A stretch of 64,000 nt of DNA, taken from NCBI GenBank assembly GCA_965202585.1, contig OZ241830.1:26350001-26414000 (forward strand), given 5' to 3'. Below are positions 562 through 39,122 of this stretch, piece after piece. The notes beneath the pieces were generated by a model, which was not told the DNA's origin, did no database searches, and saw only the letters and a program-made list of their open reading frames with translations. How positions within the stretch are numbered: position 1 is the stretch's first letter; the number at the start of each line of letters is the position of its first letter. This DNA is from Thalia democratica. Taxonomy: Eukaryota. The translations under genes and the position numbers were made by a program.

Positions 562-3500
562 ATGATGGCAACAACGAACTGCTTTGACCCACTTCTAGCA
601 GCAGGAAACAGTTTTATGACCAACCAACCGTTAACTTCCGGAATAAGTCAACCGTGTAAGATATATGACGTCACAAATCAACAAAACTTTTCAGCTACAA
701 ATGGTCATTACATTAATGGTAACACATTGAATTTTTCGAACGGTATAATAGATTATTCGTTGTTAAATTCGGATTTCAATGACAATCAGGTTTGATTTGG
801 TATAAAAAACTTATAAACAGCTACTAAATTAAATAGAATTTATTGAAATTTATTTTATTGAATATATTTTTCTCTTCGGATTTAGGGTGTAGCCTTAAAA
901 AAACAATAGTGACCTCATATAAATATATTAAAAAAGGCTTCTTATAAAATTGTAATAAAAATAACGAACTGTTTTATAAACTTTATCAAGTTTTATAATG
1001 AAAATTTCGTTAATCTTTCTAGGTAGCTGTACAAACTGCTATCAACGCAGGCAAAATTCATCAAAATCTGCAGCTGCAAAGCTTCCAGCAATACCTACCT
1101 GCAATAGGGAACCCAGAAAGTAGAGCAAACTACCAGCAAATTACTTTAGCCAACACTCACAAGTCAGTGCAAAATGACTATCAAACACAACAAAAGAACA
1201 ATCTTGCTGTTGTTAACCAACAACAAATGCAGATGTTCCAGCAAAATGTTAATGACAAGTGTTACAACACAAGTTCTGTACAAAATCAAAATGTCAACCT
1301 AGGACTTGGGCAACATCAGTTTGCACAACAACCACAAATACAACAAGGTCAGCAGCATATTCCGTTGGTTCAAAATAACCAAACAAATACATTTTTGTTG
1401 AGTTTTATTCTTGAAAAACTAAAAAGTGTAACCTTATTTATTCTAACAGATCAAAAAAAAAGATATCCTCAGCAATACTTAATGCCACGAACTCACTCAC
1501 TTCATCAAACCAACGTGCAGAATAATGCTGGTATGAGCTTACACTTGAATTTTAAATTAGTATCTAAAAATTATTTATTTGCTTTTGTTAACAGACCTGA
1601 TAGCTGTACAACATAGTGGTGACCCTTTGCTAGTAAACAACAGACGAAAGGTAATAAAACAGACAGTTTTGTATTTAACTGGGAAATCGATCATTTTTAT
1701 GTACAAACTTTTTTTTTAGATTAGTGAAGCTGTGCTTTCAAGCTCAAACATTAAGAATTTTAATTTTGAATCATCTGACGGTGAAAGACCAGGACAGTAA
1801 GGATGTTTTATTTCTTAGAGCATTTACGACTTCTAGTAAATATACTCATTAACTCTAATATATAAAACTTTTATTTTTTATTAGAACAAAAATAAAGAGA
1901 GTAAAAAGTTTTGTATTATTTTTTTACAAACATGCGCATCAAATTTGAAATATGTTATAACTCCTTTTAGGACTCGTGTGAAATTTACAAGACTGCAGTT
2001 TGAAATTTTGGAGGCGTCTTTCAAGAAAAGTCAAAATCTTAAAAATGGCAGAAAACTTTTCATTTCCGAGATGACTGGACTTACTGAAAATCAAGTTGTG
2101 GTAAGTAAAAAACGAGTTTGTTTATTTAATTTAATCAAAATATAATTTATTACACTTAGTTGTAATATAAACATCGTCGAAAGATATTGACAGTACGAAA
2201 TTATAAAGAAAAAGTAGATGTATAAAAACTAGATGTAATAAATAAAAATTTGTTCTAGAACTGGTTTAACAACAAACGGTCAAAACTTATTAGAATTGGC
2301 AAAAGGCTGCCAGCTAGGAGGTTCATAAAAATGAAAGGTTAGTTTGACTTTATTGAAGTAAAGTAGTCAGTAGTGTATTGAAATATAATTTAGCAATACA
2401 TAAATATATAAAATACAATTTCTTTTAACAGACGGAGTAGTTGGAATAAACAATGTTGTAACAATGGTAGATGTAAGTTAACTATTAAAAAATAGAAACC
2501 AAATAAAAAGCTTTTTTTTTTTTGACCTTAATTTAATTTTTTTGTATAGATACTACTTTTAAAAATTATTTTAGAAATACAGTACAATACGAATATATAT
2601 ACAATTAAATTAACTTTATATCTTAAAAGTAATGGAAACATGTTTAAAATTATAATTTCATAGCAAGTACTACCATAAAAAAGTAAAAATTTAAACTTAA
2701 AAACTTCTAAATTAAAAAAGTTAAAGATACGCTGTAAAAAAATGACTAAAAATTTTAGCACCCAAAAGACAGTGCGAGTGAAAAAATAGTAGATCAGAAC
2801 TTATATGAAAACCATAAGGATTACAGTAGAGAAGGGCAATCTTCAAAAGATAGCTCTAACAAGATGAGAAAGTAAGTTTTGGGAAAATTTAACTTTAAAA
2901 GAAATGTAAACAAATAAATATATATTATTAATGAAGTGCAATCACATATTTAAAAAACTTTTGAATACTAAGTTACACGCAACTATGAGCTTAACAGCGC
3001 CGACGCGTAACAGAGAAGATACGTAAGTGACGAAAAATGTTCTCATTCTGTTTTATTTTTATATAATTAGTTTTCTGTGTTTTAAACACTACCGCATATT
3101 TTAATATAATAAACAACAATATTTGAAGTATTTTAAATACAGTCGTACCCGCTATGACGTCATTAAGCGTTACATCTGATCATTTTGTAGTAACAAAAAA
3201 AAAACAAGATAAAATTTTATCACTTAAACTAATTTAAATGATAGGCTACGCATATGTACAGCTTTAACATACTCTGAAACTAAAAAATTTTATAATATTA
3301 CTAAACTGTTAGGCAGAGGATAACGCTCAATTTCGACCAGTTGGAGATTTTGGAAGATTTTTATAATTTCACCAGCTGGTATCCTATGGTTGATCAGATT
3401 GAAAAACTTGCAAAAAGGAGTAAATTGTCTTGTTATGAAGTGAAGGTAAATTATTAACTATTATCTGTCAGCTATATAATAAAGATACTATAAAATAAAA

Positions 3501-4472
3501 TTAGATTATATCAGATATAAATTTAAGAAAAGTATTAAACTGTATTAACCAATCCAGCTATGACGGTCAGTTTTTATTTTGTGTTAAGACAGTTTTTTCA
3601 GATAATTTCATTTCTCGGTTCATAATATGAAAATACTTTTTCTACTTTAATGAACAATAAAAATGAGTTTAACAATTGGAACTTAAGTTTCTGTAGAAAT
3701 GTTACAACTTTAATTTTAGATAAAAATAGGTTAAAGAAACAGATAAAGCTGAAAGTTTATTTCTAATACAAAATACTTTTTTTTACGTAAATTTAACTAC
3801 TTTTTTTAATAAATTTTTGCATGAAATGTGTTAGTAACATTAATTACATAATCGCAGATTGACAGTCCGTTCAACGGTGAAACTTATTAATTGTATCAAT
3901 TTGTTATAAATAGTTTTCAATATAAGAATTTTCAATATGAATATGTTCTTTTGCTTAATGTAATTTAATTAAATAATAAAATTAGTTATAGTAAGATATT
4001 CGGTGCAAATTTATTAAGATATAAAAATCCTATAATCTTAAAATTTTTATATACAAAACATTAGTGATCGTTCATTTATAAATTCATAATAGTTATTCTG
4101 AAATGATATTTAAATTATTAAAACCTACACAATCATAACTAACCATCACTTTATAATGTTTACCAAAGTTATTTAAACTTTTATACAAAAATCTCTGATA
4201 AAAAGTATTGATCGCTGCTTCAATCTTTCTTTTTAATATATTTGAAAAACTTAAAAAGAGCCTAAAAAAAATAATTAAAAATACTTGTTCAACCTTGTTT
4301 GAATGACGTATATGTTTCTGTTCTGCAGAAATCTAATATTATACATTATTTAAGTACTTACAAAGTTTTTCAACAGAATTGGTTTCAAAACCGACGCAGA
4401 AAAAACAGAAAATGTGGAATTGAAATTAACAAATTAGTTGATAGGAAAAGAAAACTTCCGTTTGATATGTGA
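562..4472 (+). CDS. Double-homeodomain transcription factor, paralog 1 (452 aa, 11 coding exons)
   Basis: Exons 562-789, 1023-1347, 1450-1530, 1595-1650, 1720-1796, 1971-2100, 2259-2337, 2432-2472, 2759-2871, 3313-3445, 4377-4472. All introns are GT..AG with compatible phases, total 1359 nt and no internal stop. HD1 = PGQTRVKFTRLQFEILEASFKKSQNLKNGRKLFISEMTGLTENQVV|NWFNNKRSKLIRIG. HD2 = MRKQRITLNFDQLEILEDFYNFTSWYPMVDQIEKLAKRSKLSCYEVK|NWFQNRRRKNRKCG. Every junction has a counterpart in the paralog at 35399-39122. N-terminal exon boundaries are less certain than the HD exons. Confidence 0.9.
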
Positions 4473-6321: not shown

Positions 6322-6707
6322 TTATAATTGAAAAACTACAACGAAGTACTTGGAACAAGATAAAGTGCAAAATAAACAAATATTTGTCTTGCTTATACTT
6401 TGCACAGATTTTTAACACTACATAAGTCCGAATCACAGCAGTTATATTCATATAGTAAGTGATGAAGACGACATATTCCTAGTTTTTACAGTATAAAATA
6501 TTAGTACAACTCATCATTTTGATATTCTCCTGCTCGGTCCATTTTAAACATAGTAATTGCACAAAAACCTGAAGTATTTTCATTATATATGATGCAATTG
6601 ATTCAGAAATGTTCTCATAACTTGCATTAATTATGTATAGAACTCTTGTCTAGCAGAGCTACTAAAAACCAACATAGAACAATTAGAAATGTAATTAAAG
6701 ATCCCAT
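6322..6707 (-). pseudogene. Ly6/uPAR-like three-finger pseudogene (type C, copy 1)
   Basis: ATG at 6707 gives signal peptide MGSLITFLIVLCWFLVALLDKSS. Remnants GFCAI, SCTNILYCKN, CCDSDLCS and GPI-like tail SVQSISKTNICLFCTLSCSKYFVVVFQL* are spread over several frames with stops. The 386-bp length matches the intact genes. Confidence 0.75.
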
Positions 6708-8963: not shown

Positions 8964-9356
8964 TTAATTGAGGTGAAAAAATATTAAAATAATAAAAGCT
9001 GAAATATATAGTAAAAAACAAAAGTTTGTTTTGTTTATACTTTGTGCAGAACTTTCAAGATTGCATAAGTCTTTCTCACAGCAATTTATCTCAAATTTCA
9101 TGCCGTATAACTCATGTTTAGAAACTCCTGGCTCCTTACAAAACTCAGTATCAGTGCAACCCAGATCTGTACAAATATCTTCTCCACACTTGTCAAACGT
9201 GCCGCTTTTAAACTTGTAGATTGCACAAAAGTCTGAACTATATCCTGGACAAGTGTATTTTGTTAAATCAGAATGATTCCCAAAGTAGCACTGTAGACTG
9301 AAAGATCCGTTAAATAAACAACTAAAAATAACTAAACTTAATGTCAAAGTCTTCAT
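8964..9356 (-). CDS. Intronless GPI-anchored Ly6/uPAR-like three-finger protein A1 (130 aa)
   Basis: Signal peptide MKTLTLSLVIFSCLFNGSFS, then LQC, 10 mature Cys ending CCEKDLCN, small-residue omega region (ESSA), spacer and C-terminal hydrophobic tail FCFLLYISAFIILIFF. Confidence 0.88.
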   Translation of the reverse strand: MKTLTLSLVIFSCLFNGSFSLQCYFGNHSDLTKYTCPGYSSDFCAIYKFKSGTFDKCGEDICTDLGCTDTEFCKEPGVSKHELYGMKFEINCCEKDLCNLESSAQSINKTNFCFLLYISAFIILIFFHLN

Positions 9357-12230: not shown

Positions 12231-12570
12231 CTATGAAGTGTAAAACAAAAACATAATTATAAAATAAATAACAACAGTTTTTCTTGTTCAAACTTTGAGC
12301 TATGTTTTTTTACAGCAACTTAAAGTAAATTTCATGCCATGTTTTTCTTAATTGGAAAATTCTGGTTGTTTACTAAAGCCTTTTTAAGCACAACCCAAAA
12401 CCTTGCAAACTTGTTGATTTACATGACTTCAAACTTCATTGTTTTTAAAGTTTTCAAACGCACGTAACCCATCTTTTTTTAACTTTTATATTTTCCGTCA
12501 CTATCGTATTTGATGCAATCTAAACTTAAAGAACTGTAGTATACTAACAATAATTGAATTTTTTATGTTG
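12231..12570 (-). pseudogene. Ly6-like pseudogene (type B, copy 1)
   Basis: Remnants SLDC, QQVCKVLGCA*, KQPEFSN*EKHGMKFTLSCCKKT* and a hydrophobic tail, with multiple stops. Flanks are homologous to those of 21397-21787. Confidence 0.7.
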
Positions 12571-13118: not shown

Positions 13119-13495
13119 TTAAATTGAAAAACACATAGGAATAACATAAAGTGCAAAAAATAAACAAATATTTGTGATGCTTATATTCTTCACAGACTTT
13201 TAACATAACATAAGTCCGAATCACTGCAGTTATATTCATACAGTTAATAATGAATATGACATTTTCCTGGTTTTTACAGTAAAAACTATTAGTACAACTT
13301 ATCATCGTGCTATTCTCATGTTACTTTCAATTTGACCACTTTTCAACATAGAAATTGCACAAAAACCTGAAGTATATTCATTATATATGATGCAATTGAT
13401 TCAGGAATGTTCTCATAGCTTGCATTAATTATGTATAGAACTCTTATCTAGAAGAGCTGCTAAAAACCAAATTGAAATGTAATTGTAGATTTCAT
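13119..13495 (-). pseudogene. Ly6-like pseudogene (type C, copy 2)
   Basis: Homologous to 6322-6707: MKSTITF.., GFCAISMLKSG, SCTNSFYCKN, CSDSDLC and tail SVKNISITNICLFFALYVIPMCFSI*, with frameshifts and stops. ORF 13063-13305 is an out-of-frame read-through of it. Confidence 0.72.
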
Positions 13496-25171: not shown

Positions 25172-28100
25172 CCTTTTTAGTTAAACTTTTATGTAAAATT
25201 AAAAAGTTCTGGTTTGATAAAACGATTATTTAAAATTTTATTTTGTATAGAAATTAATCTATATTTTGAGTATACTAATTGGTTTTAAACATAAGTTGTC
25301 AAAAAAAAAAAAAAACTTTTATTAATTTTTTTCATTAGAGTTAACTTATAATACTTTTTTTAACTTTTAATCAAAATTTTAACTATAAAAACATTAAAAC
25401 AATGAAGAGTATATCTATTTTAAGGTTAAAACAATTTTAAAGTATAATTTAAATCATTATTTTTTTAATTTATTTATAATTTATTATTAGGTACCTGAAT
25501 GTTTTACTTACATATCACGTTATTGGATATAACATTTTAGCGCTTATTTTGTCGTTAAACCTTACAATAATAAGACACGAACCTTTATGTGTCTGTTTTT
25601 ATATATATTTTTTATCTAACATTTTATTTGAGAAAAAAAATCAAGGTTGCAAATGTTTAAAAGATGACGTTGTATATGAGCAAAAACCTAGCTATGCATT
25701 TAATCTAATGACTAACAACCTTAGCTGAAATATTAGCGTACTAATTAAGTGTTTGAAAAAATAAATTCACTATATTTTTGGGCTTTGAACCTTTAGTTGT
25801 TAATACTTTATCTAAAACACAATCATAAAAAAAGTGTAGCTAAAATATATGTAACTATACTTATCAAGGTCTGAAATACTATTCAGTTATATAGAACAAA
25901 AGTTCTTTATTTCTCTGAAACTAGTTATATAACTTACTTTTAAGTTTAATTATTAGTATATTTGTGTTCAAAACAGTTTAGAATTTACCAAATCCTTAAA
26001 AGTTTATAGAATAATGAAAAAATAAAGTTTAATTTTAAGGAAGAAAACTAAATCTTATAATGCAAAAATAAAAATCTCGTTATAAGTATTTACGCTAAAA
26101 TTATTCATCTAGTTTAGAACTTTTACGTTTATTTAACTTTATATGGTTTAATTATCCTAAAAAACACGATTAGTTTTGTTAAATCAAAGTTTAAAAACAT
26201 TTAAGCACAAGATCTTGTATATTACACAAAACATTACTGACTAGAAATGCAAACTTACTACACTGACAAATAACTATAATAGCTTAGTAGTTTTTAAATA
26301 AACTGTATCTTATAACTGTTTGTAAATTATATTTTAAGTTTTCTTCGAACAATTTATTTAAATCTGAATTCTTTTCATATTCAAAAATACTAAAGTTTCA
26401 TACTTAGTTATTTATACTTCGAAGAATTTTAAAGCATCAATAACTTGCACTACATATTCATACATTTATTCTATAGTTTTTGTATGGTTTTAATCAAACT
26501 TTGTATTTCGCTTAAGCAATGAATATTTTTTAGCAAATGACAACAGCTATCAATGAAATACATTATGTTTAGACTTTTAATGCTAAAAACTTTAGAAAAG
26601 TTTAAGTATTGCATTACAATGAAAATAGTTTTTATATCCGTTTAGTGTTACACTTTTATTTATTAACAATAAAATTTCAAAACTTTATTTAAAGTTCTGT
26701 ACAATAACTGCAAAGAAAATTGAAACACCTGAACTAACTCGAGCCCTATAAACTGTGATTACAAAACGAAATATAAAAACGTCATAATATAAAAAAATAA
26801 TAATAAAACCAAAAACCTGAGACAAACTAGTAATCTTTTTCATTAAAAATGGGATATTGAACAAGTTGATTTTCTAAAATTTGTACAGTGACGTATTAAA
26901 ATTAATTTAATACTATTTTATTAGCCTAAAGTGAATTAAAAAAGCTAAAACCGATTAAACATGTATATAACTAATTAAAGCTTCTAAGTAAAATAACTTT
27001 AAAAATATTTTTTTAAGAAAATATTGGCTCTTGTAATTGTTAGTTATTTAAACTAAAATTATAATATGTTAGTAATAAATTCTATTTAGTAGTGAAATGG
27101 ATTATAAAACAAGATAAGCTATTTTCATTGAGTATTTTAAAGAACAAGCTATCACTAGTTAGTATATCAAAACTTAAAAAAATATCTTTCAAATGGTAAA
27201 CATTTTGAGTTTGAATTTGTAACTCATCGCAAAATTAAAAAAACTTTAAGTTTATCACTTTTTATAATTAGATCAAACCATATTTTATATTAGTAAGGTA
27301 AGCAGAAAAGTCTAGCTTTAAGAAAGTTTACTTAATTATAAAATAATTAAAATTTATGAGCTTTAAATATTTACTTAATCTTCTTTGTAAATTAATTTAT
27401 TATTATGTATTAGTTTTTTAAAGTTTTCTAACAATATATTAATTAATGCTTTCACATTTTTGTTTTCGTTTAAGTTTATTAAAGTTTGTAAACTTACACT
27501 ACATGAAGAATTATAAAATTTAGAATTTTTCTATTTTACTTAACATCTTTTGGTTAAAAGAAGGTATCAAACAATAAGTGCACAGCTAAAATAACGTACT
27601 TTAAAGAAAAAACAATGTATTTGATATAACAGCTTCGTTTATATTGTTTAAAACTAAAAGTTATTAAAACAACCTAAACTATAATTTAAGCGTTTATCTT
27701 TTACTGAACAACAGTAAATTTTTTTCTGTTTAATTTTAACCACTCTGTATTTTAATAAATTTGTTTTTTGACTAAGCGTATGTTAAATAAACTAAATGAT
27801 TAAAATTTAAACTTAAAGTTTCACACAACGTGTATTTATTAATCTTTGTATATCATATAAAAGTCATAACACAAAAACACTTCAGTCTATACTACAATAA
27901 TGATCAAATTAATTAAACAAATAAAATTAAAAGCAATTTTTTCTGTAACTACTATACTAATATTTAATATTAGTAAATACACTTGATAAAATTATTTAAT
28001 TGATATAGATTTTTACAACAGTTGTTACTTTTTTAGTTTTTATTTATATATGATTATTTGTTGATAATTATCAAAAGAGTAAAAAAAAGGTTTACTACAT

Positions 28101-28352
28101 TTAATAAAACTATAAAACATACAAAACTAAAACTACTAATAAGAATTTTATAAATTTTGTTAAACATTCGGTTATTTTTTATTTAGCAAAGACTTAACTA
28201 TGTTTTTTCTACTTTTTGTTTTTTAAACTCAAAAAAAAGTTTTTGTTGCTTTTTATAAAACAGTTTATTGCTAAAATGAGTTATTTCAAAGTCAAAATTT
28301 GTAAAAAAAGTATATTTTTGAAAAAAATTAAAATAATTTTACATATGATTTA

Positions 28353-28742
28353 TCATATCATTAAGTAGTAAAATACAAAAACAAAAACTACAAAACAAAA
28401 TTTTGTCTTGTTCATACTCTGTGCAGAATTTTCAAAACTTTCAAGATTGCATAAGTCTTTGTCACAACAACTTATTGTGAATTTCATGTCGTGAAATACA
28501 TGTTTAAAAGTTCCTGGCTCTTTACAATAAAAACTATCAGTGCAACCCATTTCAGTGCATATCTTTTCATCGCAATCATCAAATGTTCCGCTTTTATACT
28601 TGTAGATCGCACAGAAGTTTAAATCGTAGTCTGAACAACTTATATCAGATAATTCAGTTAAATTTCCGTTGTAGCACTGTAGACTGGAAGTATCGCTAAA
28701 CAAACAACATAAAAAAACTAAAGTTGTAATCAAAGTTTTCAT
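28353..28742 (-). CDS. Intronless GPI-anchored Ly6/uPAR-like three-finger protein A4 (129 aa)
   Basis: Signal peptide MKTLITTLVFLCCLFSDTSS, 10 mature Cys, CCDKDLCN, NSAQ and hydrophobic tail FCFVVFVFVFYYLMI. Confidence 0.88.
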   Translation of the reverse strand: MKTLITTLVFLCCLFSDTSSLQCYNGNLTELSDISCSDYDLNFCAIYKYKSGTFDDCDEKICTEMGCTDSFYCKEPGTFKHVFHDMKFTISCCDKDLCNLESFENSAQSMNKTKFCFVVFVFVFYYLMI

Positions 28743-28848
28743 GATTGTTTAGTTGTAACAACTAATAAAGCAAACGGCACTTTGAAACTGTTTCGATCAT
28801 ATTTTCTTATCTCATGATTAGTTTGTTTGCGAACTTAAAGTGATTAGA

Positions 28849-28870
28849 ATGCAATTGATTTGTATTACAT
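28849..28870 (-). promoter_or_regulatory. Upstream motif of Ly6 A4 (ATGCAAT-tgatttgt-ATTACAT)
   Basis: About 107 bp upstream of the ATG. Confidence 0.55.
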
Positions 28871-29145
28871 CCTTGTTCAGTTAAGTTTTTCTTAAAATTA
28901 AACAGTTTGAGATTAAAAACAAAACTATTTAAAATTTTAAATTGCCTATCAAATAATTTATTTTTTAAGCATACTGATTGATCTTCAAGATAAATTGCCA
29001 AATAAAAAAATGTTTTTTTTTAAACAAGCAGGAACAATAAAAGTTTAGACAAAAAAAAAATGTTTGTTTATGTTTTTAAAAGGTTGAAATAAATAGGGTT
29101 AATTTATATCTAGTAAGTATTTTTACATTTTAATTAGAAAAAAAA

Positions 29146-29370
29146 TTAAAATATTAAAACAAGCATAATGAATGAAAACATTTTTTTTTTTATAAATTCT
29201 TGAGCTGAGTTTCTTATTAGAAAATTACTTGTCATAGATATTAAATTCTTATTATTGTTGTTTTTAAAAAGTATTACAAATATAGCTAATTATGTATTCG
29301 AACTACAATAAACTTGAATAGTTGCAAAATAAACAACATAAAAAATTAGTAACGTAAATATCTTTGTAAC
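29146..29370 (-). pseudogene. Internally deleted Ly6 relic with retained upstream motif (29456-29477)
   Basis: FLCCLFCNYSSLL* matches A4 FLCCLFSDTSSLQC, and NSAQEFIKKKMFSFIMLVLIF* matches the GPI tail. Most of the Cys domain is missing. ACGCAAT-cggtttgt-ATTACAT lies ~90 bp upstream. Confidence 0.65.
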
Positions 29371-29605
29371 GAATTAAGATTTAGATACTATATGGCATAA
29401 AACACTTTTTTCTTTACGTTATACTTAACTTATCAACGTTTTAAAATAGTTTTAAACGCAATCGGTTTGTATTACATCCTTATAAGGTAAATTTCGTTTT
29501 TAGAATTTAAATAGTTTAAGCTTAAAAAACAATGGTTATTCAAACAATAGTATGATTATTAAGTAAAAACTCTTAAAACATTGAGTTTCTCCAAATGATT
29601 ACAAA

Positions 29606-29725
29606 TTATCAGGGTTAGAAATAATTAAAGTATATATGATCGGTTTAGATATGAACGGGTTAGAAGTGATCGGACTAAAAATGATTTGGTTATTTATGAT
29701 CGGGTTACAATCAATCGGGTTAGAA
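29606..29725 (+). repeat. Degenerate 15-bp minisatellite, consensus ATGATCGGGTTAGAA
   Basis: Six clear units at 29636-29725 plus two weaker in-phase units upstream. It produces the MIGLx pentapeptide in ORF 29636-29899. Confidence 0.8.
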
Positions 29726-31713
29726 ATGAAAGTAAACCGCTACATAAATTTAAACAAAAAGAGCTCGCCTATGACTTTTTATGAATATATAAGGTTTTTA
29801 GTTCTTTTTGGTTTTTATCAGTTTCTTCATGTTCTCCAGTTCAGCAACAATCAAGTACAGTTATATTTTGAACCAAGGATCTTTATTCATTTAAAATAAC
29901 ATTCTTGCACTTGTTTCCTATCAAAATTTTTAATATTGTTTTTATAAATGTTTAAATTGTTTTTTATTTTTATAGCAGATAAAACAAACTTATGTGCATT
30001 TAATTATTTAAATTTAAAAATAATTTTATTAATTAACAGGTATAGTAGATCGTATTAAACATAAAGTCGAAAAAAAACCTTTTTTTCCAATATAAATTTT
30101 AGTTAAACCATTAATTACAAAAAAAAATAAAATATAAAAATGTATATTTAAAATATTTACTAAAACGTTTTTAAATTATATTTTGCTATTTAGAGGCAAC
30201 TATATATCGGTTACAAAACAATTCAAGTTTCGAAAATTAAAATTCTTAAAAACAAGTTTAAAGAGCCACATCTCATGAAGCAGTATATTTACTTTTTTCA
30301 AATGCTCGTATAGGTATAACTAATATTATTGTATAAGTGTAAAGAAAGTTCAATAAGTGTATATATAAAAACAGATTTTTTAAAAGTTATTAGAATCAGC
30401 ATTATTTTAAACCTCTTATTTCCATATTGAAATAATGTTTAAAACTTACCAAATTAGAAAATGCTTTATTAGGTAAATAATAGTGGTTTTACAAAAAGTT
30501 GAAAAAAATAAATTATTAATTTATAATTAGAGATATAAATGAAATAAATAAAAACAACTAAAGTTAACAAAGTTATTGTCGGAACTTAAATTGTCAGAAT
30601 TTGAACAGTTGTGCACCTTGTGTATGAAATATACTTTATACATTGTAGTCTGAACTGTAAAGTATATAAATAAAAATAAGAATTTTCAGTTTTAATTATA
30701 TTACAACAACTTTATTCTTCCCTTACGTTTTATAAGTACCAGTATGTTATTAAAAAGAATTTAATTAGTCTTTTACCAGGGTAAAACATAAATAAGACAT
30801 GTTGTCACTAAATAGATTTTATTTAATAATTATAAGTATACTAGTTTAACATCAGAATACATCAACCTTTACGAGAAAAAACTTTAAAACTAAGCACATA
30901 ACTTTTGTAAACGTGTTATAAAATGTGAATTGTGATAATCGTTTGTAAAAAAATCAGTTACTTTTTTTAATAAATCGCAATTAGAATATTTTTTATTTTA
31001 GATTTAAACATTATTATTTCAATTTTTAGAAATCTTTAAACACATATAAAACATAATACAGAATTAAAAAAGCTACTAATAGGTTTACTTTTTAATAATA
31101 TGAAGATCAATTTACAGACACAATATGATAAACTTACATTGACCTTTGAAATTAGAAATAATATCATTAAACTTGACATTGAACTTTAGCAACCTGTTTT
31201 GTTGTTGTTAAGACTGATGCTGACTACATAGTTATAATGTAACTTTTACTGACAAATAATCTGAACCACTTTATAAGTTTTAGTTTAAAAATGTTTTTTT
31301 ATTAAATTTTACCACTAAAATTTTTTTTGTCAATATACCTTTTAAATTAGTTTAAAATTGTGAAGTTAAAGCTAACTTCATAACAAAACAAATTTTTAGT
31401 ATTTAGTTCTTTATGTTCATTTTATATATCATTTTGAATTTAGTCTTGTTTATTTTTTATTCATAAATACTAATTTATAACAAATCTTTGCTTAAACTTT
31501 GTTAAACAAAAAAAAACTTTTTACACAAACTATATTTAAGTTTACAATAGTATATGTTATATTTATCTAAAGTTTGTATTAAATATTTTGTAAATTCATA
31601 CTTAAATCACATTGTATCTTTAACTTATTTATTAGCAAAGTTAAAACTGTATTAAAAGTGTTTAATTGTTCTTACAGAAACTTTTATCACTTTTAAGATC
31701 TTTTTGATGACTA

Positions 31714-33330
31714 ATAAATAAAAACAAATTATACAGTAATCTTCCTTTATTCTACCAACATATGTTTCTATGTGTCAACGAATCAACACACTTCAACTGG
31801 GTTCTGTAGAAAAATAATTACTGTAATGAGAGATTAGAAGCATAGAATAAAGTAGGTGTATACATGTTTTCATTAAAATAAGATATTTTCTACAGATAAT
31901 AGTTATTAATAGTTGAAATACTTAATATTAAATCCGACTGTTATAAAACTATATAATATTTGTGATTAATAAGTCTAATGTAATTGAAGTAAGCTAAATT
32001 ACATAACAAAACATAATATAAACAAACAACTTACGTTAATGGGAAAGATAACTAATTCAAATTTTATTGTTGTTAACTAATGAGAAATACATTCGTTACA
32101 ACTAATAATTACGTCACAAGGTAAATAAGGTTATTTAAACTATTTAATTTGTATTGCAAAGAACATTGATTTATTTTTTATGTAGTCTATTTTGAACAAA
32201 AATAAAATATTAACCATTAGTTAGTGAATCAATAAAATTTAATGTAACGACGCTGAAGGCAATACAAGTCACAAAAACTCGATGTAACATGTATATTATA
32301 TATTGAATGTTTGTAATGATTGAATCAAAGTTATATAGAATTAGGAAGCAGATTTAATTCAAATGTAAAAGTCAAAAATAAAAAAAATTAAACTTTAAGA
32401 AAAAACAAAACACAAAAAACAAAATTGTTATTAGGCTTAAAATGTACTGACCGATAATTAATTTACAGCAACATACATAAAATCATAATGACCTAAATTA
32501 AATATATATTGCATTTTATAATTAATAAAATAATTAATTGGTAAAGTAGGGGTCGGCTGTTTAATTTAAATATCCCATACATATATTTTAATATATATTG
32601 ATATTATTGCCCAATAACAATTTTGTTTTTTGTGTTTTGTTTTTTCTTAAAGTTTAATTTTTTCATTTTTGATTTTAACATTTGAACTAAATCTGCCTCC
32701 TAAATCTATATAACTTTGATTCAATCATTACTAACATTCAATATATAATATACATGTTACATCGAGTTTCTGTGTCTTTTATTGCCTTCAGCGTCGTTAC
32801 ATTAAATTTTATTGATTCACTAACTAATGGTTAATATTTTATTTTTGTTCAAAATAGACTACATAAAAAATAAATCAATGTTCTTTGCAATACAAATTAA
32901 ATAGTTTAAATAACCTTATTTACATTGTGATGTAATTATTAGTTGTAATGAACATATTTTTCATTAGTTAAGAACAATAAAATTTGAATTAGTTATCTTT
33001 CCCATTAACGTGAGTTGTTTGTTTATATTATGTTTTGTTGTGTAATTTAGCTTACTTCAATTATTTTAGACTTAATAATCACAAATATTATATAGTTTTA
33101 TAACAGTCGGATTTAATATTAAGTATTTCAACTATTAATAACTATTATCTGTAGAAAATATCTTATTTTAATGAAAACATGTATACACCTACTTTATTCT
33201 ATGCTTCTAATCTCTCATTACAGTAATTATTTTTCTACAGAACCAAGTTGAAGTGTGTTGATTCGTTGACACACAGAAACATATGTTGGTAGAATAAAGG
33301 AAGATTACTGTATCATTTGTTTTTATTTAT
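31714..33330. repeat. Long inverted repeat (fold-back-like palindrome): arms ~720 bp, spacer ~172 bp
   Basis: Arm 31714-32436 is the reverse complement of 32609-33330, about 95% identical by eye (e.g. ttctaccaacatatgtttc versus gaaacatatgttggtagaa). No TSD or ORF recognised. Confidence 0.95.
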
Positions 33331-33611
33331 ATTCCAGTGAAGTTACTTCACTAGGATCTTCTGTTAGCAAACAATTAAAACTATATTTTGAACAGTTTTA
33401 ATGATTAATAACTTTTAATAGTCGTTGTTGTTAATTATTAGTCTTTAAAATACTAAAAACAATGTTACTGAACAAGAATGTACAAAGGATACAAACCGGT
33501 TACATTTTAATTAGTTTTTATACGCAAATATACTAAGTATAAATTTCGGAAAAAAATAAAGACAGTTTGAAAGTATTGTGCACTTTATTGGTCTTTAAAT
33601 TTTAACACAAA

Positions 33612-33988
33612 ATGAAACCTTTAATATTTTTTTTAGTTTTTTATGCTGTTTATTTATGGATTGTTGCAGTCGACGGTGCTACGACGGGAATTCAACTTAT
33701 CTAACTGGTCAGAATTGTCTAAAACACAATTCAGATTTTTGTGCAATCTACAAATATAAAAGCGGCACACCCGATTTTTGTGAAGAAAAAATTTAAATAA
33801 AAAGAAGTTGCACTAACAATCATTTTTGTAAAGAATCTGGAATTTCAGAACAAGAGTTATATGGCATGAAATTTACAATAAATTGCTGTAAAAAAGACTT
33901 ATGCAATCTTTAAAATTCAGCGCGAAGTTTAAAGAAGATAAAATTTTGTTACGTACTTTTTATTTTTATTTGTTATATATTGTTCTAA
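33612..33988 (+). pseudogene. Ly6-like pseudogene A5 (opposite orientation to the left-hand cluster)
   Basis: MKPLIFFLVF, a frameshift in a T-run, then LCCLFMDCCSRRCYDGNSTYLTGQNCLKHNSDFCAIYKYKSGTPDFCEEKI*IKRSCTNNHFCKESGISEQELYGMKFTINCCKKDLCNL*NSARSLKKIKFCYVLFIFICYILF*. The upstream motif at ~33489-33507 has lost one half-site. Confidence 0.9.
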
Positions 33989-34169
33989 CGTTTACTTTAA
34001 CAGCAGTTAGTTTTTTTTTTTCAGCTGACTTTAAAAAGTTTTACTTTATATATAATCTTTAAGTGTTAATAAAACAAATTTTTAAAACTAAAACATTTTA
34101 TGAAAAGCTATAGAGAAGATTCTGTTCGCTTTAAGTACACAAAATGTTTTTATAACATCTTATTGTAAA

Positions 34170-34480
34170 AAATATATATTCCAAGTTTTTATGCTAAAAT
34201 TAATAAATTAAGTTTAAATAATTATTTATTTCATCCTATTTTAGCAGTTATTATTACTTTCAGATTTTTATTTAAACAAGGTTTTAAACAAAATTCGATC
34301 TTTTATTAAGTTAATTAAAAATTAGTATTTCACTAATTTTATCTCACAAAACTGGGATTTTACAACATTAGTTTTATCGGTTTGAAAGTTTTAATTTTAC
34401 AATAAACTGTTGTGAAACGGATCTCTGAACTTACAAAACTTATAAAACAACAATTATTTTATGCAATTTTTATAACATTC
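34170..34480 (+). pseudogene. Decayed Ly6 relic on the + strand
   Basis: A single frame at 34348-34428 reads KTGILQH*FYRFESFNFTINCCETDL*, matching (E)PG...H...MKFTINCC.KDLC of the family. The upstream part is only weakly recognisable and boundaries are approximate. Confidence 0.55.
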
Positions 34481-35398
34481 AAAAGCAAAAATTTGCTAAA
34501 AGACACAACTAAGTGAGCATCGCACCACTTCTAAATAAAATATGGTCATATTTTTTTATCAAAAAAAAAAGTTAATCTATTTTTTAATACTATAAATAAG
34601 TCTTACAAAAAAACTTTATAAAATTTTGGTAAATTTACCAGCTTTAAAGTAATAAAGTTTTTACTTTATTAACGCATGAACGACATTTGAAATAACTTTG
34701 AATGTAATTTTACGTTCAGAAAAAAGCTAAGAATGATAGATAAGTACTATATCAATTATTTCAATAAGCATTTACTAGTTGCGGCGAATAAAACAACAAG
34801 GCTTTAACTAAATTAGATAGAAAGCAATACAAAGACGAGAAATATTAGATGTTGCTTTTAGTTTTTGCCGTTGTCTTAAATTGTTAACACAATAGTACAA
34901 AACAAACCTTTGAAAAAAATGTTTCTAAGAGCAAGATGTTTATTAATTTTTTATTTAGATTTTATGAAACTTTAAGTTTATTTAAGCTCGATAATTCTTC
35001 TAGGAAAAAGAGTAAACAAGTAAACTAAAGTTAAGTTTAATAAAAAACTAACAATAAATTTATAAAATTATATTATTAAAAAGTTGATTTAAAGATTATG
35101 CTTAAAAAATTTAAGGTTTAGTTAACAACTAAAAATTATTTAAATTAACTATACCAACTAAAGTTTAGAATACTTACAAATAGTAGTTTATACGGTAACA
35201 AAATTAATCGAAAAGAAAAACTTAGTATGCTTTTTGTCATCTATGTGGACATGTTCTTTTAAAGTTATAAAACATTTATTATCATTACTTTTGTGCAAAG
35301 TTATAATAACTTCTATAGTGTAAATGTATATATTGTCTATGATATTGAAATATACTGTTTAGTAATAAGAATAAAGCGTATGTACACTTTTATATACT

Positions 35399-38300
35399 TT
35401 AACACATATCGAACGGAAGTTTTCTTTTTCTATTTACAAGTTTGTTGATTTCAATTCCACACTTTCTATTTTTTCTTCGTCGGTTTTGAAACCAATTCTG
35501 TAAAGTGATCAATATTTAAAAAATAAATATTTTTAAGTAGATTAATTTCCTAAGTTTAATTTTTTACTTTAACAGCAACTTATATTCTGTTTAAAATAGA
35601 TTACATAAGTAGCTAAAAAGTTCTTTAAGGCCTTACTTAAAATTGTAAATATGTTTATATGAAAAAATTGAAAGTGAAACCTTCAGGTTTAAATACATAC
35701 ATTTATTACCTTAGAATAAATAGTTTTAAAAATTATACTAAAATACTGCTAAACTAAACTTTGTAGGTTGTAAATACAGAACATATTTTTCTACACTTAA
35801 GAATGAAACAGTATAAATTTATTTACAAGCTCAACCTCATATTAACTTTTATATATATGCTGATACATATACTATTAAAAACAAAATAAAACTTATATCT
35901 TTTTGATAAATAAAAGTTTTAGATTTATGTACTTTTTTACCTAAATTTAAAAATCAAGACATGAAATGAGTTCTAAGAAACTAAAGTACAAACATTTGTT
36001 AAAGTAGTAGTTATAAAAATTTAAGTTTTAAAAAGTTAACATTCAATGAAATAAGGAAAATTTTTAAAGGTGCATTACGTATCTTAAAACATATTTTCTG
36101 GCGAGTCTGGTTTGTTTTGCTCTATATTGTTGTTAATTTTTAATTAACCGTGATATAAACAAGTTTTGTTTTTTATAGTATCGTTATAGTAGTTTGAAGC
36201 TACGGATAAAAGTTCATATATTACCTTCACTTCATAACAAGTCAATTTACTCCTTTTTGCAATTTTCTCAATCTGATCAACCATAGGATACCAGCTGGTG
36301 AAATTATAAAAATCTTCCAAAATATCCAGCTGGTCGAAATTGAGCGTTATCCTTTGCCTAACAGATAAAAGTATATGAAAATATATTAGTTTGTACAGAT
36401 GCGTAAGTGTAAAATTAGTTAAAGTTATGAAATATAACATATTTTTTTTTTTAGTTTTAGGCTCAATGAGCGACGTGTGATGACGCCATAGGGGGTGTAG
36501 TTTAAGTTACCTCTAATGCTGTTGTATTTTACAACAAAATAGCAATTATGTTAGGTATTGCAAAAATAAGTTTAACATGAATATTTAAATAGATTTTAAA
36601 GGTATTTGTATTTACAGTAATTTCCTAACATTATTGTGCATCACCACTACTTAACTCATAACGGCAAGTACATTAGTTCTTAATATAATGTTTGTGTGTT
36701 TTAAAAGGACAATCTTTATAAATGTGTTACCAAATTCATTTTTTAATAATATAAACTAACTTTCTAAGTTTTTTTAAACTATCTTCGGCTGGTTGTTCTT
36801 CAGTATTGTAATCTTCATGATCATCATAATCAGCATGGTCTTCTAACTTTTCAACCGTAATATCTTCGTTATGCTGAATTTTCATTAACAGTTTACAATG
36901 CTTTTACAAAACATTTTTATCATTTTTTTAGTAAAAAAACGTTATATTTTAAAAGTTGCTAAAAACTAATAAAAATGGTTTTTTAATAATTTTTGTTTAC
37001 TTACACTAATTCTTATTTACTTTTAGTACACAAAAATAGAAAAATCATAATACTTCACGTACTTTTACTACAGTAACAGCATCCGTTTTTTGAAATACTT
37101 GGTCTGTTGGAAATATTATTTAAAAATTAATTGTAGTTATATAATTTTGTTTAATAATTAAAAGAAAACAATTATTGTTTTATTTTAAAGATTAGACTAA
37201 TTATATAAACAATTTATTAACAAACAAGAAATTTAAAACAAACTTTGCTTCTTTATACATTTACCAGCAGGTAATCCTTTGCTCATTCTAATAAGCTTTG
37301 ACCGTTTATTGTTAAACCAGTTCTGTAAAGAACTTTAAAATTTTTAATACTCTAAAAAAACTTTATTTAGTTTTTTAAATGGCTATTTAAATATTTTCAG
37401 ATATACTTTTAAATAAAAAAACTCGTTTAATTGTTAAAAAACTCGTTTATTGTTAAACCAGTTCTATAAAGAATTTAAAAATTTAATATAGTCTACAAAT
37501 ATATGTTTATTTAAACACCTCTAACTTGTTTTTTACAGTGCAAGATTTTTTCATATATACTTACGAAACAAACAAACTCGATTTTTTCTTACCACAACTT
37601 GATTTTCAGTGAGTCCAGTCATCTCGGAAATGTCAATTTTTCTGCCATTTTTAAGGTACTGACTTTTTTTAAAAGATGCCTCCAAAATTTCAAACTGCAG
37701 TCTTGTAAATTTCACACGAATCCTATAAATTTTGTTACATTTTAAAACTAGTACGTTTATAAAATTTCATTTTTAAAACGTGCATAATTGTTTAAAATGC
37801 AAGAAAGTAATCTCTTACTGTCTCTTTTTATTACCAATGGATGTCTCGGAATAAAGTTTCTTGTCTTTTGAGCTTGAAGGCGCGTCTTCACTGATCTAAA
37901 AAATAAACCTGTATTTGGAGCTTACTAGCTTACAAATAAAATACGAAATAGTTGATTTAGTTACCTTTCGTGTGTTGCTTACTAGAATAGGATTACCACT
38001 TTGTTGTACAGCTATCAGATCTGTAAACAAAAACAACTCATGACTTAAGATATTAATTAAAAACTAAGTTTAAGCTTATACCAGTATTATATTGCATGTT
38101 TTTACAATGAAGTGAGTGGTTCTGTTGCATAACATTCTGCTGTGGATATCTTTGATTTTGACCTGTTAAAAAAAAAAAGATGCACTTTTGAGTTTTTAAA
38201 TCATGAAACTTAACCCATTTGTATTTAGCTACATATTATGTGCTACTTGATAATGCTGCTGACCTTGTTGTATTTGTGGTTGTTGTGCAAACTGCTGTTG

Positions 38301-39122
38301 CCCAAGTGCTAGGTTAACATTTTGATTTTGATATTGTACAGCGTTTGTGTTGTAATAATGGTCAACATCATTTCGCTTAAACATATGAGCTTGTTGTTGA
38401 TTATTAACAATAGAAGTGTTGTTTTGTTGTGTTTGATAGTCATTTAGCACCGTATTGTAAGTATTGGTTAGATTCATTTGCTGATGAGTTGTTTTCTTTA
38501 CTGGGTTCACAATTACAGGTTGGTTTTGCTGGTAAATTTGCAACTGTAGATTAAAATTATCTATTATTGCTATTTCAACAGTGTTAACATATACCTATGC
38601 AAAATAACAAAGTCTTTATATAAATAAATAAAACAAAAGTTCTATTGAGTTTATTGCTTTACAGTTGTTTCTCGCTTACATCGTGTAGAAACAATTGTAA
38701 AGTAATAAACTCAATAGAACTTTTATTTTTTTAACTGTATAAAGGCTCCTTAAGTTTGAAACTTTCTTGAATTTTTTTGTTTAAATCTCAAAATTTCAAC
38801 AAAGTCTTTTGTAAAAAACTTTGCTAAAGTTTATAAAGCAAATAGTAAATGTTTAAAAACTTTTATGAATGTTTGTTGTGAAAAGTGTATATCAAAAAAA
38901 AACCTGATTGTTATTGAAATCGGAATTTAACAGAGAATAATTCATTTTACCAATAGAAAACTTCAAACTGTTACTATTAGTGCTGTGAAGATTTGGAGCG
39001 AAAAAGTTTTGTTGTTTAGTTACGTCGTATATTTTTTGACTTATTCCGGAAATTAACGGTTGGTTGGTCATAAAACTTTTTCCTGCTGCTAGAAGCGGAT
39101 CATAATAATTTGATGTTGCCAT
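35399..39122 (-). CDS. Double-homeodomain transcription factor, paralog 2 (452 aa, 11 coding exons)
   Basis: Exons 39122-38904, 38594-38264, 38162-38082, 38020-37965, 37895-37819, 37722-37593, 37322-37244, 37103-37063, 36873-36761, 36357-36225, 35497-35399. All GT..AG, total 1359 nt, open frame. HD1 = KRQIRVKFTRLQFEILEASFKKSQYLKNGRKIDISEMTGLTENQVV|NWFNNKRSKLIRMS. HD2 differs from paralog 1 at three conservative positions. Ends RKRKLPFDMC*. Confidence 0.9.
37443..37463 (-). other. Candidate 21-nt micro-exon (duplicated acceptor plus NWFNNKR codons) in intron 6 of paralog 2
   Basis: tttatAG|aactggtttaacaataaacga|GTtttt is a copy of the exon 7 acceptor region, in frame (phase 0/0). Use as an exon is not demonstrated. 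Confidence 0.4.
38635..38724 (+). other. 90-nt hairpin (38-bp stem, 14-nt loop) in intron 1 of paralog 2
   Basis: AAAAGTTCTATTGAGTTTATTGCTTTACAGTTGTTTCT / AGAAACAATTGTAAAGTAATAAACTCAATAGAACTTTT. The only two non-Watson-Crick pairs are G-U on the + strand. Confidence 0.85.

What the first reader, a model, noticed from the sequence alone, without database searches (positions are those of the whole stretch)
562..39122. Mirror-image locus: a convergent pair of double-homeobox genes brackets a fast-turnover GPI three-finger gene cluster, with a palindrome at the hinge
Seen: HD gene (+), then nine or ten Ly6-like loci (all -), the 1.6-kb palindrome, two Ly6 loci (+), then the HD gene (-). Each side reads, moving inward, HD gene, decayed Ly6, A-type Ly6, so an ancestral [HD-> <-Ly6] unit was duplicated in inverted orientation and the left arm then expanded tandemly. 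Both HD genes remain intact while most Ly6 copies died. Established knowledge: double-homeobox genes (mammalian DUX) act in cleavage-stage and germline programmes, and GPI Ly6/uPAR proteins (Bouncer, SPACA4, CD59) mediate gamete and immune recognition. Inference: this could be a co-regulated module of a transcription factor plus variable surface proteins, e.g. a gamete-recognition or allorecognition locus. I do not know of a described locus with this architecture.
Basis: partly seen in the sequence, partly recalled or inferred. Interest (0 to 1): 0.78.

Follow-up and report, generated by a model that had tools for sequence, protein, structure and literature searches.

The report
Inverted double-homeobox pair in Ly6 array
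Two inverted copies of a double-homeobox gene specific to this lineage do flank a row of mostly dead Ly6 surface-protein genes in this AT-rich marine animal, but the "hinge" palindrome is a common jumping element and the linkage looks like a by-product of repeated segmental duplication, not a designed module.

Summary
The sequence features are real. There are two convergent paralogous double-homeobox genes: L on the + strand (562-4472, 435 aa) and R on the - strand (39122-35399, 428 aa). Each has 10 GT-AG exons. They share about 69% protein identity, and their homeodomains are under purifying selection. Between them lie 3 intact and at least 7 decayed single-exon Ly6/CD59-like genes, and a palindrome with 710-nt arms.

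The proposed architecture does not hold.
- **Palindrome:** it is one insertion of an interspersed repeat present in thousands of copies. It has a ~16-bp target duplication and an empty site in a paralogous locus.
- **Bracketing:** Ly6 genes continue outside the homeobox pair on both sides, over roughly 190 kb.
- **Third copy:** window 24157 onward is one arm of an inverted segmental duplication of at least 103 kb, about 2.9 Mb away. That copy carries a third, frameshifted homeobox gene next to Ly6 copies, so all three adjacencies trace to one ancestral adjacency.
- **Other paralogs:** the six other double-homeobox loci found on other chromosomes have no detected Ly6 gene within about 1 Mb.
- **Selection:** Ly6 pairwise dN/dS is 0.27-0.57, so these pairwise averages show no diversifying selection.

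No RNA data exist for this locus, so co-regulation is untested. The scan has already noted another Ly6 array in this genome. What remains of interest is an apparently undescribed, expressed double-homeobox family that resembles DUX in architecture only.

The parts
562..4472 (+). Double-homeobox gene L, 435 aa. Exons: 562-789, 1023-1347, 1450-1530, 1595-1650, 1720-1796, 1971-2100 (HD1a), 2259-2337 (HD1b), 2769-2871 (acidic linker), 3313-3445 (HD2a), 4377-4472 (HD2b plus stop).
   Evidence: Model built by hand from paralog conservation and GT-AG sites. It is open end to end. It is colinear with intronless metatranscriptome proteins P0011, P0021 and P0022. The homeodomain exons pass Pfam's gathering score. 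The E7/E8 junction is the least certain part.
35399..39122 (-). Double-homeobox gene R, 428 aa. Exons on the minus strand: 39122-38904, 38594-38264, 38162-38082, 38020-37965, 37895-37819, 37722-37593, 37322-37265, 36863-36761, 36357-36225, 35497-35399.
   Evidence: Protein identity to L is 68-70%. dN/dS is 0.375 overall, 0.19 in HD1 and 0.09 in HD2.
8964..9356 (-). Intact single-exon Ly6/CD59-like gene A1, 130 aa. It has a signal peptide, a 10-cysteine LU domain ending in CCEKDLCN, and a hydrophobic C-terminal tail.
   Evidence: Orthologs at 65-72% aa identity occur in ENA marine metagenome contigs, including TARA Oceans.
24659..25051 (-). Intact Ly6-like gene A3, 130 aa.
   Evidence: It is 96% identical in nt to its copy in paralogous locus T.
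28353..28742 (-). Intact Ly6-like gene A4, 129 aa.
   Evidence: It is 96% identical in nt to the copy at C6:23481738-23482124.
6327..6514 (-). Decayed Ly6 fragment.
   Evidence: tblastn.
12241..12428 (-). Decayed Ly6 fragment with stops.
13196..13382 (-). Decayed Ly6 fragment.
17612..18640 (-). Ly6 pseudogene split by about 660 bp, with no start codon.
21400..21758 (-). Decayed Ly6 with several stops.
33596..33985 (+). Ly6 pseudogene with 2 in-frame stops and no start codon.
   Evidence: It is absent from paralogous locus T.
34348..34470 (+). Decayed Ly6 fragment.
31718..33395 (.). The palindrome: one insertion made of two inverted copies of a ~885-950-bp interspersed repeat. It is flanked by an imperfect ~16-bp target-site duplication at 31702-31717 and 33396-33411.
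24157..39993 (.). The in-window part of an inverted segmental duplication of at least 103 kb. C6:26374157-26477458 matches C6:23486274-23383492 at 83-94% identity, non-coding DNA included.
13420..16069 (.). Three tandem copies of an 884-bp unit, 99.7-99.8% identical. This is either a very recent amplification or an assembly effect.

Best explanation
This is a stretch of a duplication-prone, Ly6-rich region of chromosome C6 in a very AT-rich planktonic tunicate. Earlier scan notes call it a salp. I did not verify that identification here.

Shown:
- A lineage-specific PRD-like double-homeobox gene sits inside this region in two old inverted copies, L and R. Both look functional.
- Between and around them, single-exon Ly6/CD59-like genes that look GPI-anchored are born by tandem duplication of multi-gene units, and most decay.
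- The palindrome is one later insertion of a high-copy foldback-like repeat.
- A recent inverted segmental duplication of at least 103 kb copied R and its Ly6 neighbours to a site about 2.9 Mb away, where the homeobox copy (T) has since been frameshifted.

Inferred:
- The homeobox-Ly6 adjacency is inherited linkage, propagated by segmental duplication. It is not a selected transcription-factor-plus-target module.
- L and R most likely act as sequence-specific transcription factors through two homeodomains. HD2 has Q50. HD1 has an unusual N50.
- The Ly6 proteins are probably cell-surface three-finger proteins.
- The biological roles of both gene sets are unknown.
For: Gene models:
- L and R are open reading frames with 10 GT-AG exons each.
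- They are colinear with full-length intronless transcripts of the family from JGI metatranscriptome-like contigs.
- L versus R gives dN/dS of 0.375 overall, 0.19 in HD1 and 0.09 in HD2, with dS of 0.47.

Palindrome as a transposable element:
- More than 2700 first-look candidates genome-wide. The 40 candidates scored are 88-97% identical and lie on chromosomes C1-C10.
- Word depth of 40,000-776,000 against about 150-1,000 for the unique flanks.
- An empty site in locus T and a ~16-bp target duplication.

Segmental duplication:
- Colinear inverted homology at 83-94% identity.
- T carries frameshifts in exon 2 and in HD2a.

Linkage is not general:
- At least 9 double-homeobox loci were found: three on C6, one on C1450, two on C1 (98.03 and 92.44 Mb) and three on C2 (56.83, 77.46 and 78.31 Mb).
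- 48 Ly6-profile hits were found genome-wide. Only the three C6 homeobox copies have a Ly6 gene nearby.
- Ly6 genes lie outside the pair at C6:26343014 and from 26428738 to 26531709.

Ly6 identity and selection:
- A 10-cysteine pattern with a CCxxDLCN motif.
- The family profile hits CD59 in the PDB at E=1.2e-4.
- Almost all of the top 50 Foldseek hits are three-finger proteins.
- Pairwise dN/dS is 0.27-0.57.
Against: - No RNA-seq exists for this species in the run index. Expression of L, R and the Ly6 genes is therefore unknown, and co-regulation cannot be excluded.
- Homeobox-Ly6 adjacency is also seen in a short contig from a related species (L012). The linkage is therefore old, which could also reflect constraint.
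- The possibility that the (+) Ly6 pseudogene belongs to A1's lineage is only weakly disfavoured (AU p=0.07).
- The exon 7/8 junction of the homeobox models is uncertain.
- The Ly6 structure model has low confidence (pLDDT 57.7), and the Pfam hits fall below the gathering score.
Confidence: 0.75

Rival explanations
1. An ancestral [homeobox-> <-Ly6] unit was duplicated in inverted orientation around a palindromic hinge. It is now kept as a co-regulated module of a transcription factor plus variable surface proteins, for example for gamete recognition or allorecognition.
For: - The inverted homeobox paralogs are real and intact.
- Moving inward from each homeobox gene, the order is a decayed Ly6 and then an A-type Ly6.
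- Homeobox-Ly6 adjacency recurs in locus T and in a contig from a related species.
Against: - The palindrome is a high-copy transposable-element insertion with a target duplication, and it is absent from T.
- Ly6 genes extend beyond both homeobox genes.
- All linked copies derive from one adjacency, and six other paralogs are unlinked.
- Homeobox copies decay while the neighbouring Ly6 genes stay intact, as in T and in the L012 relic.
- Ly6 dN/dS is below 1 in every pairwise comparison.
- The (+) pseudogene is not sister to A1.
Confidence: 0.07
2. The structural half of the reader's idea, with no functional claim. The old inverted duplication that produced L and R also carried a Ly6 gene, so the (+) pseudogenes next to R are the mirror counterparts of the left-hand Ly6 copies. 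The surrounding Ly6 genes and the palindrome are unrelated additions.
For: - The gene order on the two sides is similar.
- A clade of A1, its cross-species orthologs and the (+) pseudogene is not rejected (AU p=0.07).
- Among the in-window Ly6 copies, the (+) pseudogene region gives its highest-scoring blastn match to the A1 region, at 71% identity.
Against: - The best tree puts the (+) pseudogene with A3, A4 and the split pseudogene (support 82/85).
- No intergenic homology remains between the arms.
- The (+) pseudogene segment is missing from T.
Confidence: 0.15
3. Assembly artefact. The mirror arrangement or the palindrome comes from a mis-join or a collapsed haplotype.
For: - The 884-bp triple tandem repeat at 99.8% identity could be an assembly effect.
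- Only contigs from the same sample were available, and none spans the stretch that was laid.
Against: - L and R differ by about 30% at the protein level and have unalignable introns, so they are not haplotigs.
- The repeat's left junction with unique flank is reached by an independent short-read contig, although by only 21 nt.
- Locus T reproduces the R-side gene order.
Confidence: 0.03

Closest known systems
Mammalian DUX family (DUX4, DUXA, DUXB, DUXC) and mouse Crxos: double-homeodomain PRD-class proteins
   Same: - Two homeodomains sit in one polypeptide.
- The second homeodomain probably arose by internal duplication of a two-exon homeobox unit: both homeodomains have the intron at position 46/47 and the same exon phase.
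- The family is lineage-restricted, fast-evolving and expanded by duplication.
- PMC5787275 describes a double-homeodomain Crxos that arose independently in mouse.
   Different: - The sequences show no specific affinity to DUX. HD1's best solved matches are Engrailed and Dlx5, with DUX4 only at E about 1e-5. HD2's best matches are HESX1, PRRX2 and PAX3.
- HD1 has N50, and HD2 has a one-residue loop insertion.
- The N-terminus is long and rich in Q and N.
- From general knowledge, not tested here: DUX is restricted to placental mammals, so this family would be an independent origin.
- Expression stage and function are unknown.
Expanded, lineage-specific PRD-like homeobox families such as eutherian ETCHbox (ARGFX, LEUTX, TPRX, DPRX) and mouse Obox
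   Same: They are divergent PRD-like homeoboxes that multiply by tandem and segmental duplication, with frequent pseudogenes (PMC4904359, PMC8208926).
   Different: Those families are expressed in preimplantation embryos. No expression stage is known here. The salp family has a double homeodomain and at least 9 dispersed loci.
Ly6/uPAR (LU-domain) gene clusters, such as the mammalian LY6 complex and CD59
   Same: - Small proteins with a signal peptide, a 10-cysteine LU domain ending in CCxxxxCN, and a hydrophobic C-terminal tail that looks like a GPI signal.
- Tandem arrays with birth-and-death turnover.
- The family profile matches CD59.
   Different: - The genes are single-exon, whereas vertebrate LY6 genes usually have 3-4 exons.
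- Pfam scores fall below the gathering cut-off.
- No function or expression data are available.
Foldback-like or long-inverted-repeat interspersed repeats
   Same: - The structure is palindromic.
- The element is present in thousands of copies.
- The insertion is flanked by a target-site duplication, and a paralogous locus has an empty site.
   Different: - The ~16-bp target duplication is long for a DNA transposon.
- Most genomic copies are ~885-bp single units.
- No coding capacity was seen, and the element's class is undetermined.

Membership tests
Homeodomain, PRD / PRD-like class | A 60-aa homeodomain recognised by the family profile | tested here: met
   HD1a and HD2a exon peptides score 33.0 and 24.6 bits against a gathering cut-off of 22.9 for PF00046. 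W48, F49, N51 and R53 are present in both homeodomains.
Homeodomain, PRD / PRD-like class | An intron between homeodomain positions 46 and 47 | tested here: met
   Both HD1 (2100|2259) and HD2 (3445|4377) are split at 46/47 with GT-AG introns. The same holds in R.
Homeodomain, PRD / PRD-like class | Closest sequence similarity to PRD-class homeodomains | tested here: inconclusive
   HD2's top solved matches are HESX1, PRRX2, PAX3, ceh-37, GSC and ALX4. HD1's top matches are Engrailed, DLX5, DUX4 and MSX1. No class-wide phylogeny was built.
DUX (mammalian double homeobox) family | Two homeodomains in one protein | tested here: met
   Gene models L and R and transcripts P0011, P0021 and P0022.
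DUX (mammalian double homeobox) family | Specific sequence relationship (orthology) to DUX homeodomains | tested here: not met
   DUX4 is not the best match for either homeodomain. It scores E about 1e-5 for HD1, behind Engrailed and DLX5, and E=8e-4 for HD2.
Ly6/uPAR (LU domain, three-finger) | Ten cysteines with LU spacing and a C-terminal CCxxxxCN motif | tested here: met
   In the 11-sequence alignment, 8 of the 10 LU cysteine columns, including the CC and LC motif columns, are invariant.
Ly6/uPAR (LU domain, three-finger) | Profile match to curated family models | tested here: inconclusive
   Single sequences hit CD59, UPAR_LY6, UPAR_LY6_2 and Toxin_TOLIP only at E 0.002-0.3, below the gathering scores. 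The family profile hits CD59 chains at E=1.2e-4 over nearly the full length.
Ly6/uPAR (LU domain, three-finger) | Three-finger beta fold | tested here: inconclusive
   The AF2 model is poor (pLDDT 57.7). No Foldseek hit is better than E=0.03. Even so, almost all of the top 50 hits are three-finger proteins: TGF-beta RII and AMHR2 ectodomains, GPIHBP1, bungarotoxins, uPAR and C4.4A.
Ly6/uPAR (LU domain, three-finger) | Signal peptide and GPI-attachment signal | tested here: inconclusive
   A hydrophobic N-terminus (MKTL...) and a hydrophobic C-terminal tail after an 'ESSAQS' stretch can be seen by eye. No dedicated predictor was available.
   Pairwise NG86 dN/dS is 0.27-0.57 among paralogs and cross-species orthologs. 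Site-specific tests and population data are not available.
   No RNA runs hold this stretch.
Interspersed transposable element (for the palindrome) | High copy number dispersed across chromosomes | tested here: met
   More than 2700 first-look candidates. The 40 candidates scored are 88-97% identical and lie on C1-C10. Word depth is 100-2000 times that of the flanks.
Interspersed transposable element (for the palindrome) | Discrete insertion with a target-site duplication and an empty paralogous site | tested here: met
   Locus T runs straight through the site. The window carries TTTTTGATGACTAATAA on the left and TTTTAATGATTAATAA on the right of the insert.

The most novel reading that the evidence does not exclude
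The double-homeobox genes L and R directly regulate the neighbouring Ly6 genes, and the old homeobox-Ly6 linkage seen across species is maintained because the locus serves as a recognition system in salps, for example gamete recognition or colony/chain allorecognition. Separately, and more probably, this is an independently evolved DUX-like double-homeobox family of thaliacean tunicates that has not been described.
Probability: 0.06. Interest if true: 0.75.

Novelty: new member of a known kind. Interest (0 to 1): 0.33.

Why it matters
The proposed mirror-image module would have been a new kind of locus, but the evidence points to ordinary duplication dynamics plus a transposable-element insertion.

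What remains useful is a lineage-specific, expressed double-homeobox family in a planktonic tunicate, with at least 9 loci. It looks like an independent re-invention of the DUX/Crxos architecture. The family could be examined for early-embryo or germline roles in an animal group that has almost no functional genomics.

The locus also gives a dated series of duplications. Synonymous divergence is about 0.06-0.1 for the segmental duplication, about 0.35-0.5 for the cross-species and L/R comparisons, and about 0.6-0.7 for the A1/A3/A4 splits. That series is useful for studying gene turnover in a 23% GC genome.

Tried and rejected
- **RNA evidence.** The look-up of sequencing runs returned only two DNA contig sets from one sample, so expression could not be tested.
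- **Homeobox ORF search.** The search for homologous proteins with the R HD2a ORF found nothing. The exon-sized ORF is probably not called as a gene and falls outside the tool's length window.
- **Metagenome scan.** The search for related loci with the HD2a alignment in JGI metagenome contigs gave 318 pattern matches, none confirmed. Long-range synteny in other species therefore could not be tested. The ENA contigs are 3.1 kb or shorter.
- **Ly6 structure.** The AF2 model came out at low confidence (pLDDT 57.7). Foldseek against the PDB gave no match at E<=0.001. I use it only as a weak indication of a three-finger fold.
- **Upstream atypical homeobox.** tblastn of the homeobox proteins against the 22 kb upstream (L014, L005) found no further member of this family. 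I could not link the earlier-noted atypical homeobox gene at -17 kb to it.
- **Reads over the palindrome.** Read laying was swamped by repeat copies. It confirms high copy number but not the long-range assembly.
- **Literature.** Four paper searches found no description of double-homeobox genes in tunicates or of this locus type.
- **Binding-site motifs.** I rejected a search for homeodomain-binding motifs (TAAT) at the Ly6 promoters as uninformative in a 23% GC genome.

Full report
**Context**

The window is G000:C6:26350001-26414000. Its GC content is 21-29%, and its genes carry GT-AG introns. Earlier notes of this scan call the organism a very AT-rich planktonic tunicate, most likely a salp. 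I did not verify the species. Orthologous Ly6 contigs do occur in ENA marine metagenome assemblies, including TARA Oceans, which fits a marine planktonic animal.

**Observation**

Self-comparison confirms two inverted homologous gene-sized regions. Blocks at 285-4526 match 39393-35348 at 72-91% identity. The sequence between those blocks, the introns, does not align.

I built exon models by hand from conservation among five paralogs and from GT-AG sites.
- L has 10 exons between 562 and 4472 and encodes 435 aa.
- R has 10 exons between 39122 and 35399 on the minus strand and encodes 428 aa.
- Both models are open end to end.
- The junction between exon 7 and exon 8 is the least certain part.

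Each protein contains:
- a Q/N-rich N-terminal half;
- homeodomain 1 (exons 1971-2100 and 2259-2337 in L);
- an acidic linker exon;
- homeodomain 2 (exons 3313-3445 and 4377-4472).

Both homeodomains are split at position 46/47, which is the PRD-class intron position, and both start in the same exon phase. That pattern suggests the second homeodomain arose by internal duplication of a two-exon unit. This is an inference.

The homeodomain exon peptides pass Pfam's gathering score. HD2's nearest solved homeodomains belong to the PRD class: HESX1, PRRX2, PAX3, ALX4 and GSC. HD1 is ambiguous, matching Engrailed, DLX5, DUX4 and MSX1.

L and R share 68-70% protein identity. dN/dS is 0.375 overall, 0.19 in HD1 and 0.09 in HD2, and dS is 0.47. 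Both copies therefore look functional, and the duplication is old.

**The Ly6 genes**

Three intact single-exon ORFs lie on the minus strand at 8967-9356, 24662-25051 and 28356-28742. Each encodes 129-130 aa. Each has a hydrophobic N-terminus, ten cysteines ending in a CCxxDLCN motif, and a hydrophobic C-terminal tail.

tblastn finds seven further decayed copies. Five are on the minus strand. Two are on the plus strand, at 33614-33985 and 34348-34470.

Evidence for family membership is consistent but mostly weak:
- Single sequences hit CD59, UPAR_LY6 and Toxin_TOLIP only below Pfam's thresholds.
- A profile of 11 family members hits CD59 chains at E=1.2e-4 over nearly the full length.
- The AF2 model is poor, with pLDDT 57.7.
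- Its 50 best Foldseek matches are almost all three-finger proteins, although none is individually significant.

I accept these as Ly6/uPAR-type genes.

Relatives at 54-72% aa identity occur in ENA marine metagenome contigs. The two contig pairs I examined (P0002, P0003) carry intact ORFs and share flanking homology with A1's surroundings, so A1 at least is a conserved gene. Pairwise dN/dS is 0.27-0.57. That indicates relaxed purifying selection, not diversifying selection.

**The palindrome**

The arms at 31714-32423 and 32621-33330 are real, but they are not specific to this locus.
- A genome search with 31650-33400 gave more than 2700 first-look candidates. The 40 candidates that were scored are 88-97% identical and lie on chromosomes C1 to C10. 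Typical copies are ~885-bp single units, and several loci carry a partial second inverted arm.
- Contig word depth over 31700-33499 is 40,000-776,000. Unique flanks show about 150-1,000.
- In the paralogous locus T the site is empty. T reads straight through a sequence that is duplicated in the window on either side of the insert, at 31702-31717 and 33396-33411, with two mismatches between the copies.

The palindrome is therefore one transposable-element insertion that arrived after the T duplication. It is not the hinge of an inverted duplication.

**Wider context**

The homeobox pair does not bracket the Ly6 cluster. Related Ly6 genes were found at the following positions:
- C6:26343014, about 7 kb upstream of L;
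- C6:26428738, 26460201, 26466565, 26471201, 26525969 and 26531709, all beyond R;
- a second region at C6:23.39-23.49 Mb.

That second region is the other arm of an inverted segmental duplication.
- Window 24157-39993 matches C6:23486274-23471535 at 78-92% identity, non-coding DNA included.
- Colinearity continues to at least 26477458, matching 23383492, so the duplication is at least 103 kb long.
- It carries a third double-homeobox copy, T, with frameshifts in exon 2 and in HD2a.
- It also carries copies of A4 and A3 that are 96% identical in nt to the window genes, with dS of 0.06-0.10.

Relative to the window, T lacks two things: the transposable-element insertion and the 33418-34080 segment that holds the (+) Ly6 pseudogene.

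**Is the linkage general?**

Exon searches find at least 9 double-homeobox loci in the genome:
- three on C6;
- one on C1450;
- two on C1, at 98.03 and 92.44 Mb;
- three on C2, at 56.83, 77.46 and 78.31 Mb;
- many additional HD2a-like exons at C2:13.0-14.1 Mb.

None of the non-C6 loci lies within about 1 Mb of any of the 48 Ly6-profile hits. The three linked cases all descend from one adjacency, so they are not independent evidence for a module.

A metagenome contig from a related species (L012) places three anchors within 2.6 kb:
- the ortholog of the upstream Ly6 gene, at 77% identity;
- an HD2a-like exon;
- a unique segment orthologous to window 7715-7977.

No other homeobox exon is detectable on that contig. 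The linkage is therefore old, but in that species the homeobox copy looks like a relic. Homeobox copies die too.

**Mirror symmetry of the Ly6 copies**

In a maximum-likelihood tree, A1 groups with its cross-species orthologs. The (+) pseudogene groups with A3, A4 and the split pseudogene, with support of 82/85. An exclusive clade of A1 and the pseudogene is rejected (AU p=0.005). A clade that also contains A1's orthologs is not clearly rejected (p=0.07).

Tandem expansion on the left side is supported. Window 6209-12900 matches 13001-22026 at 64-77%.

**Expression**

No RNA runs hold this stretch. The family as a whole is transcribed. Three full-length proteins of 433-445 aa (P0011, P0021, P0022) sit on intronless JGI contigs of 1354-1544 nt. 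They are colinear with my L and R models from N-terminus to C-terminus. They belong to another subfamily, closest to the C1:92.44 Mb and C2:56.83 Mb loci. L and R themselves have no expression evidence.

**Comparison with known systems**

In architecture, the homeobox genes resemble mammalian DUX and mouse Crxos: a double PRD-type homeodomain, lineage restriction and expansion by duplication. They fail the test of specific sequence affinity to DUX. I therefore treat them as an independent double-homeobox family, not as DUX members.

The Ly6 array behaves like known LY6 clusters.

Four literature searches found no description of tunicate double-homeobox genes.

**Verdict**

The features are real. 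The mirror-image module with a hinge is not supported. The most interesting remainder is the apparently undescribed double-homeobox family.

Noticed in passing
window 24157-39993 and beyond (C6:26374157-26477458 vs C6:23486274-23383492): An inverted intrachromosomal segmental duplication of at least 103 kb, about 2.9 Mb apart, at 83-94% identity. Its boundary lies inside the window at about 24157.
   Followed up: yes
window 13420-16069: Three tandem copies of an 884-bp unit at 99.7-99.8% identity. Their homolog at 6622-7420 is single-copy. This is a very recent amplification or an assembly effect.
   Followed up: partly
window 31718-33395; copies on C1-C10: A high-copy interspersed repeat of ~885-950 bp that often occurs as inverted dimers. 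This copy has a ~16-bp target-site duplication. No coding capacity was seen, and the element's class is undetermined.
   Followed up: partly
window 29500-29899: Another high-copy repeat. Contig word depth is about 12,000-69,000, against a few hundred in the flanks.
   Followed up: no
G000 C2:13.0-14.1 Mb, C2:56.1-56.85 Mb, C2:77.46-78.31 Mb, C1:92.44 and 98.03 Mb, C7:13.97 Mb: A large genome-wide expansion of homeobox exons related to HD2 of this family. About 20 lie in a single 1-Mb stretch of C2. Several loci have HD1 and HD2 exons 1.2-1.4 kb apart, so they are also double-homeobox genes.
   Followed up: partly
L011 (JGI 3300018893 contig, 1354 nt); P0011, P0021, P0022: Full-length intronless contigs encoding double-homeobox proteins of 433-445 aa from environmental transcript data. 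They show that the family is expressed in the wild.
   Followed up: partly
L012:1-2624 and L013 (ENA marine metagenome contigs; L013 is from TARA Oceans project PRJEB4352): A contig from a related species with an intact 152-aa Ly6 gene about 1 kb from a lone, altered HD2a-like exon (RQRITL changed to WQTMAL, plus a 2-aa deletion). It also carries a segment orthologous to the unique window stretch 7715-7977.
   Followed up: partly
window 48986-52050 vs 52580-55427; 56180-57680 vs 61603-60098: Further local duplications outside the finding: a direct one at 87-89% identity and an inverted one at 65%. There is no ORF of 75 aa or more anywhere in 39200-64000.
   Followed up: no
window 1971-2337 vs 37722-37265 and 3313-3445 vs 36357-36225: The homeodomain exons of L and R are much more alike (dS 0.24-0.27) than the N-terminal exons (dS 0.44). 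This could reflect gene conversion between the inverted copies or constraint on synonymous sites.
   Followed up: no
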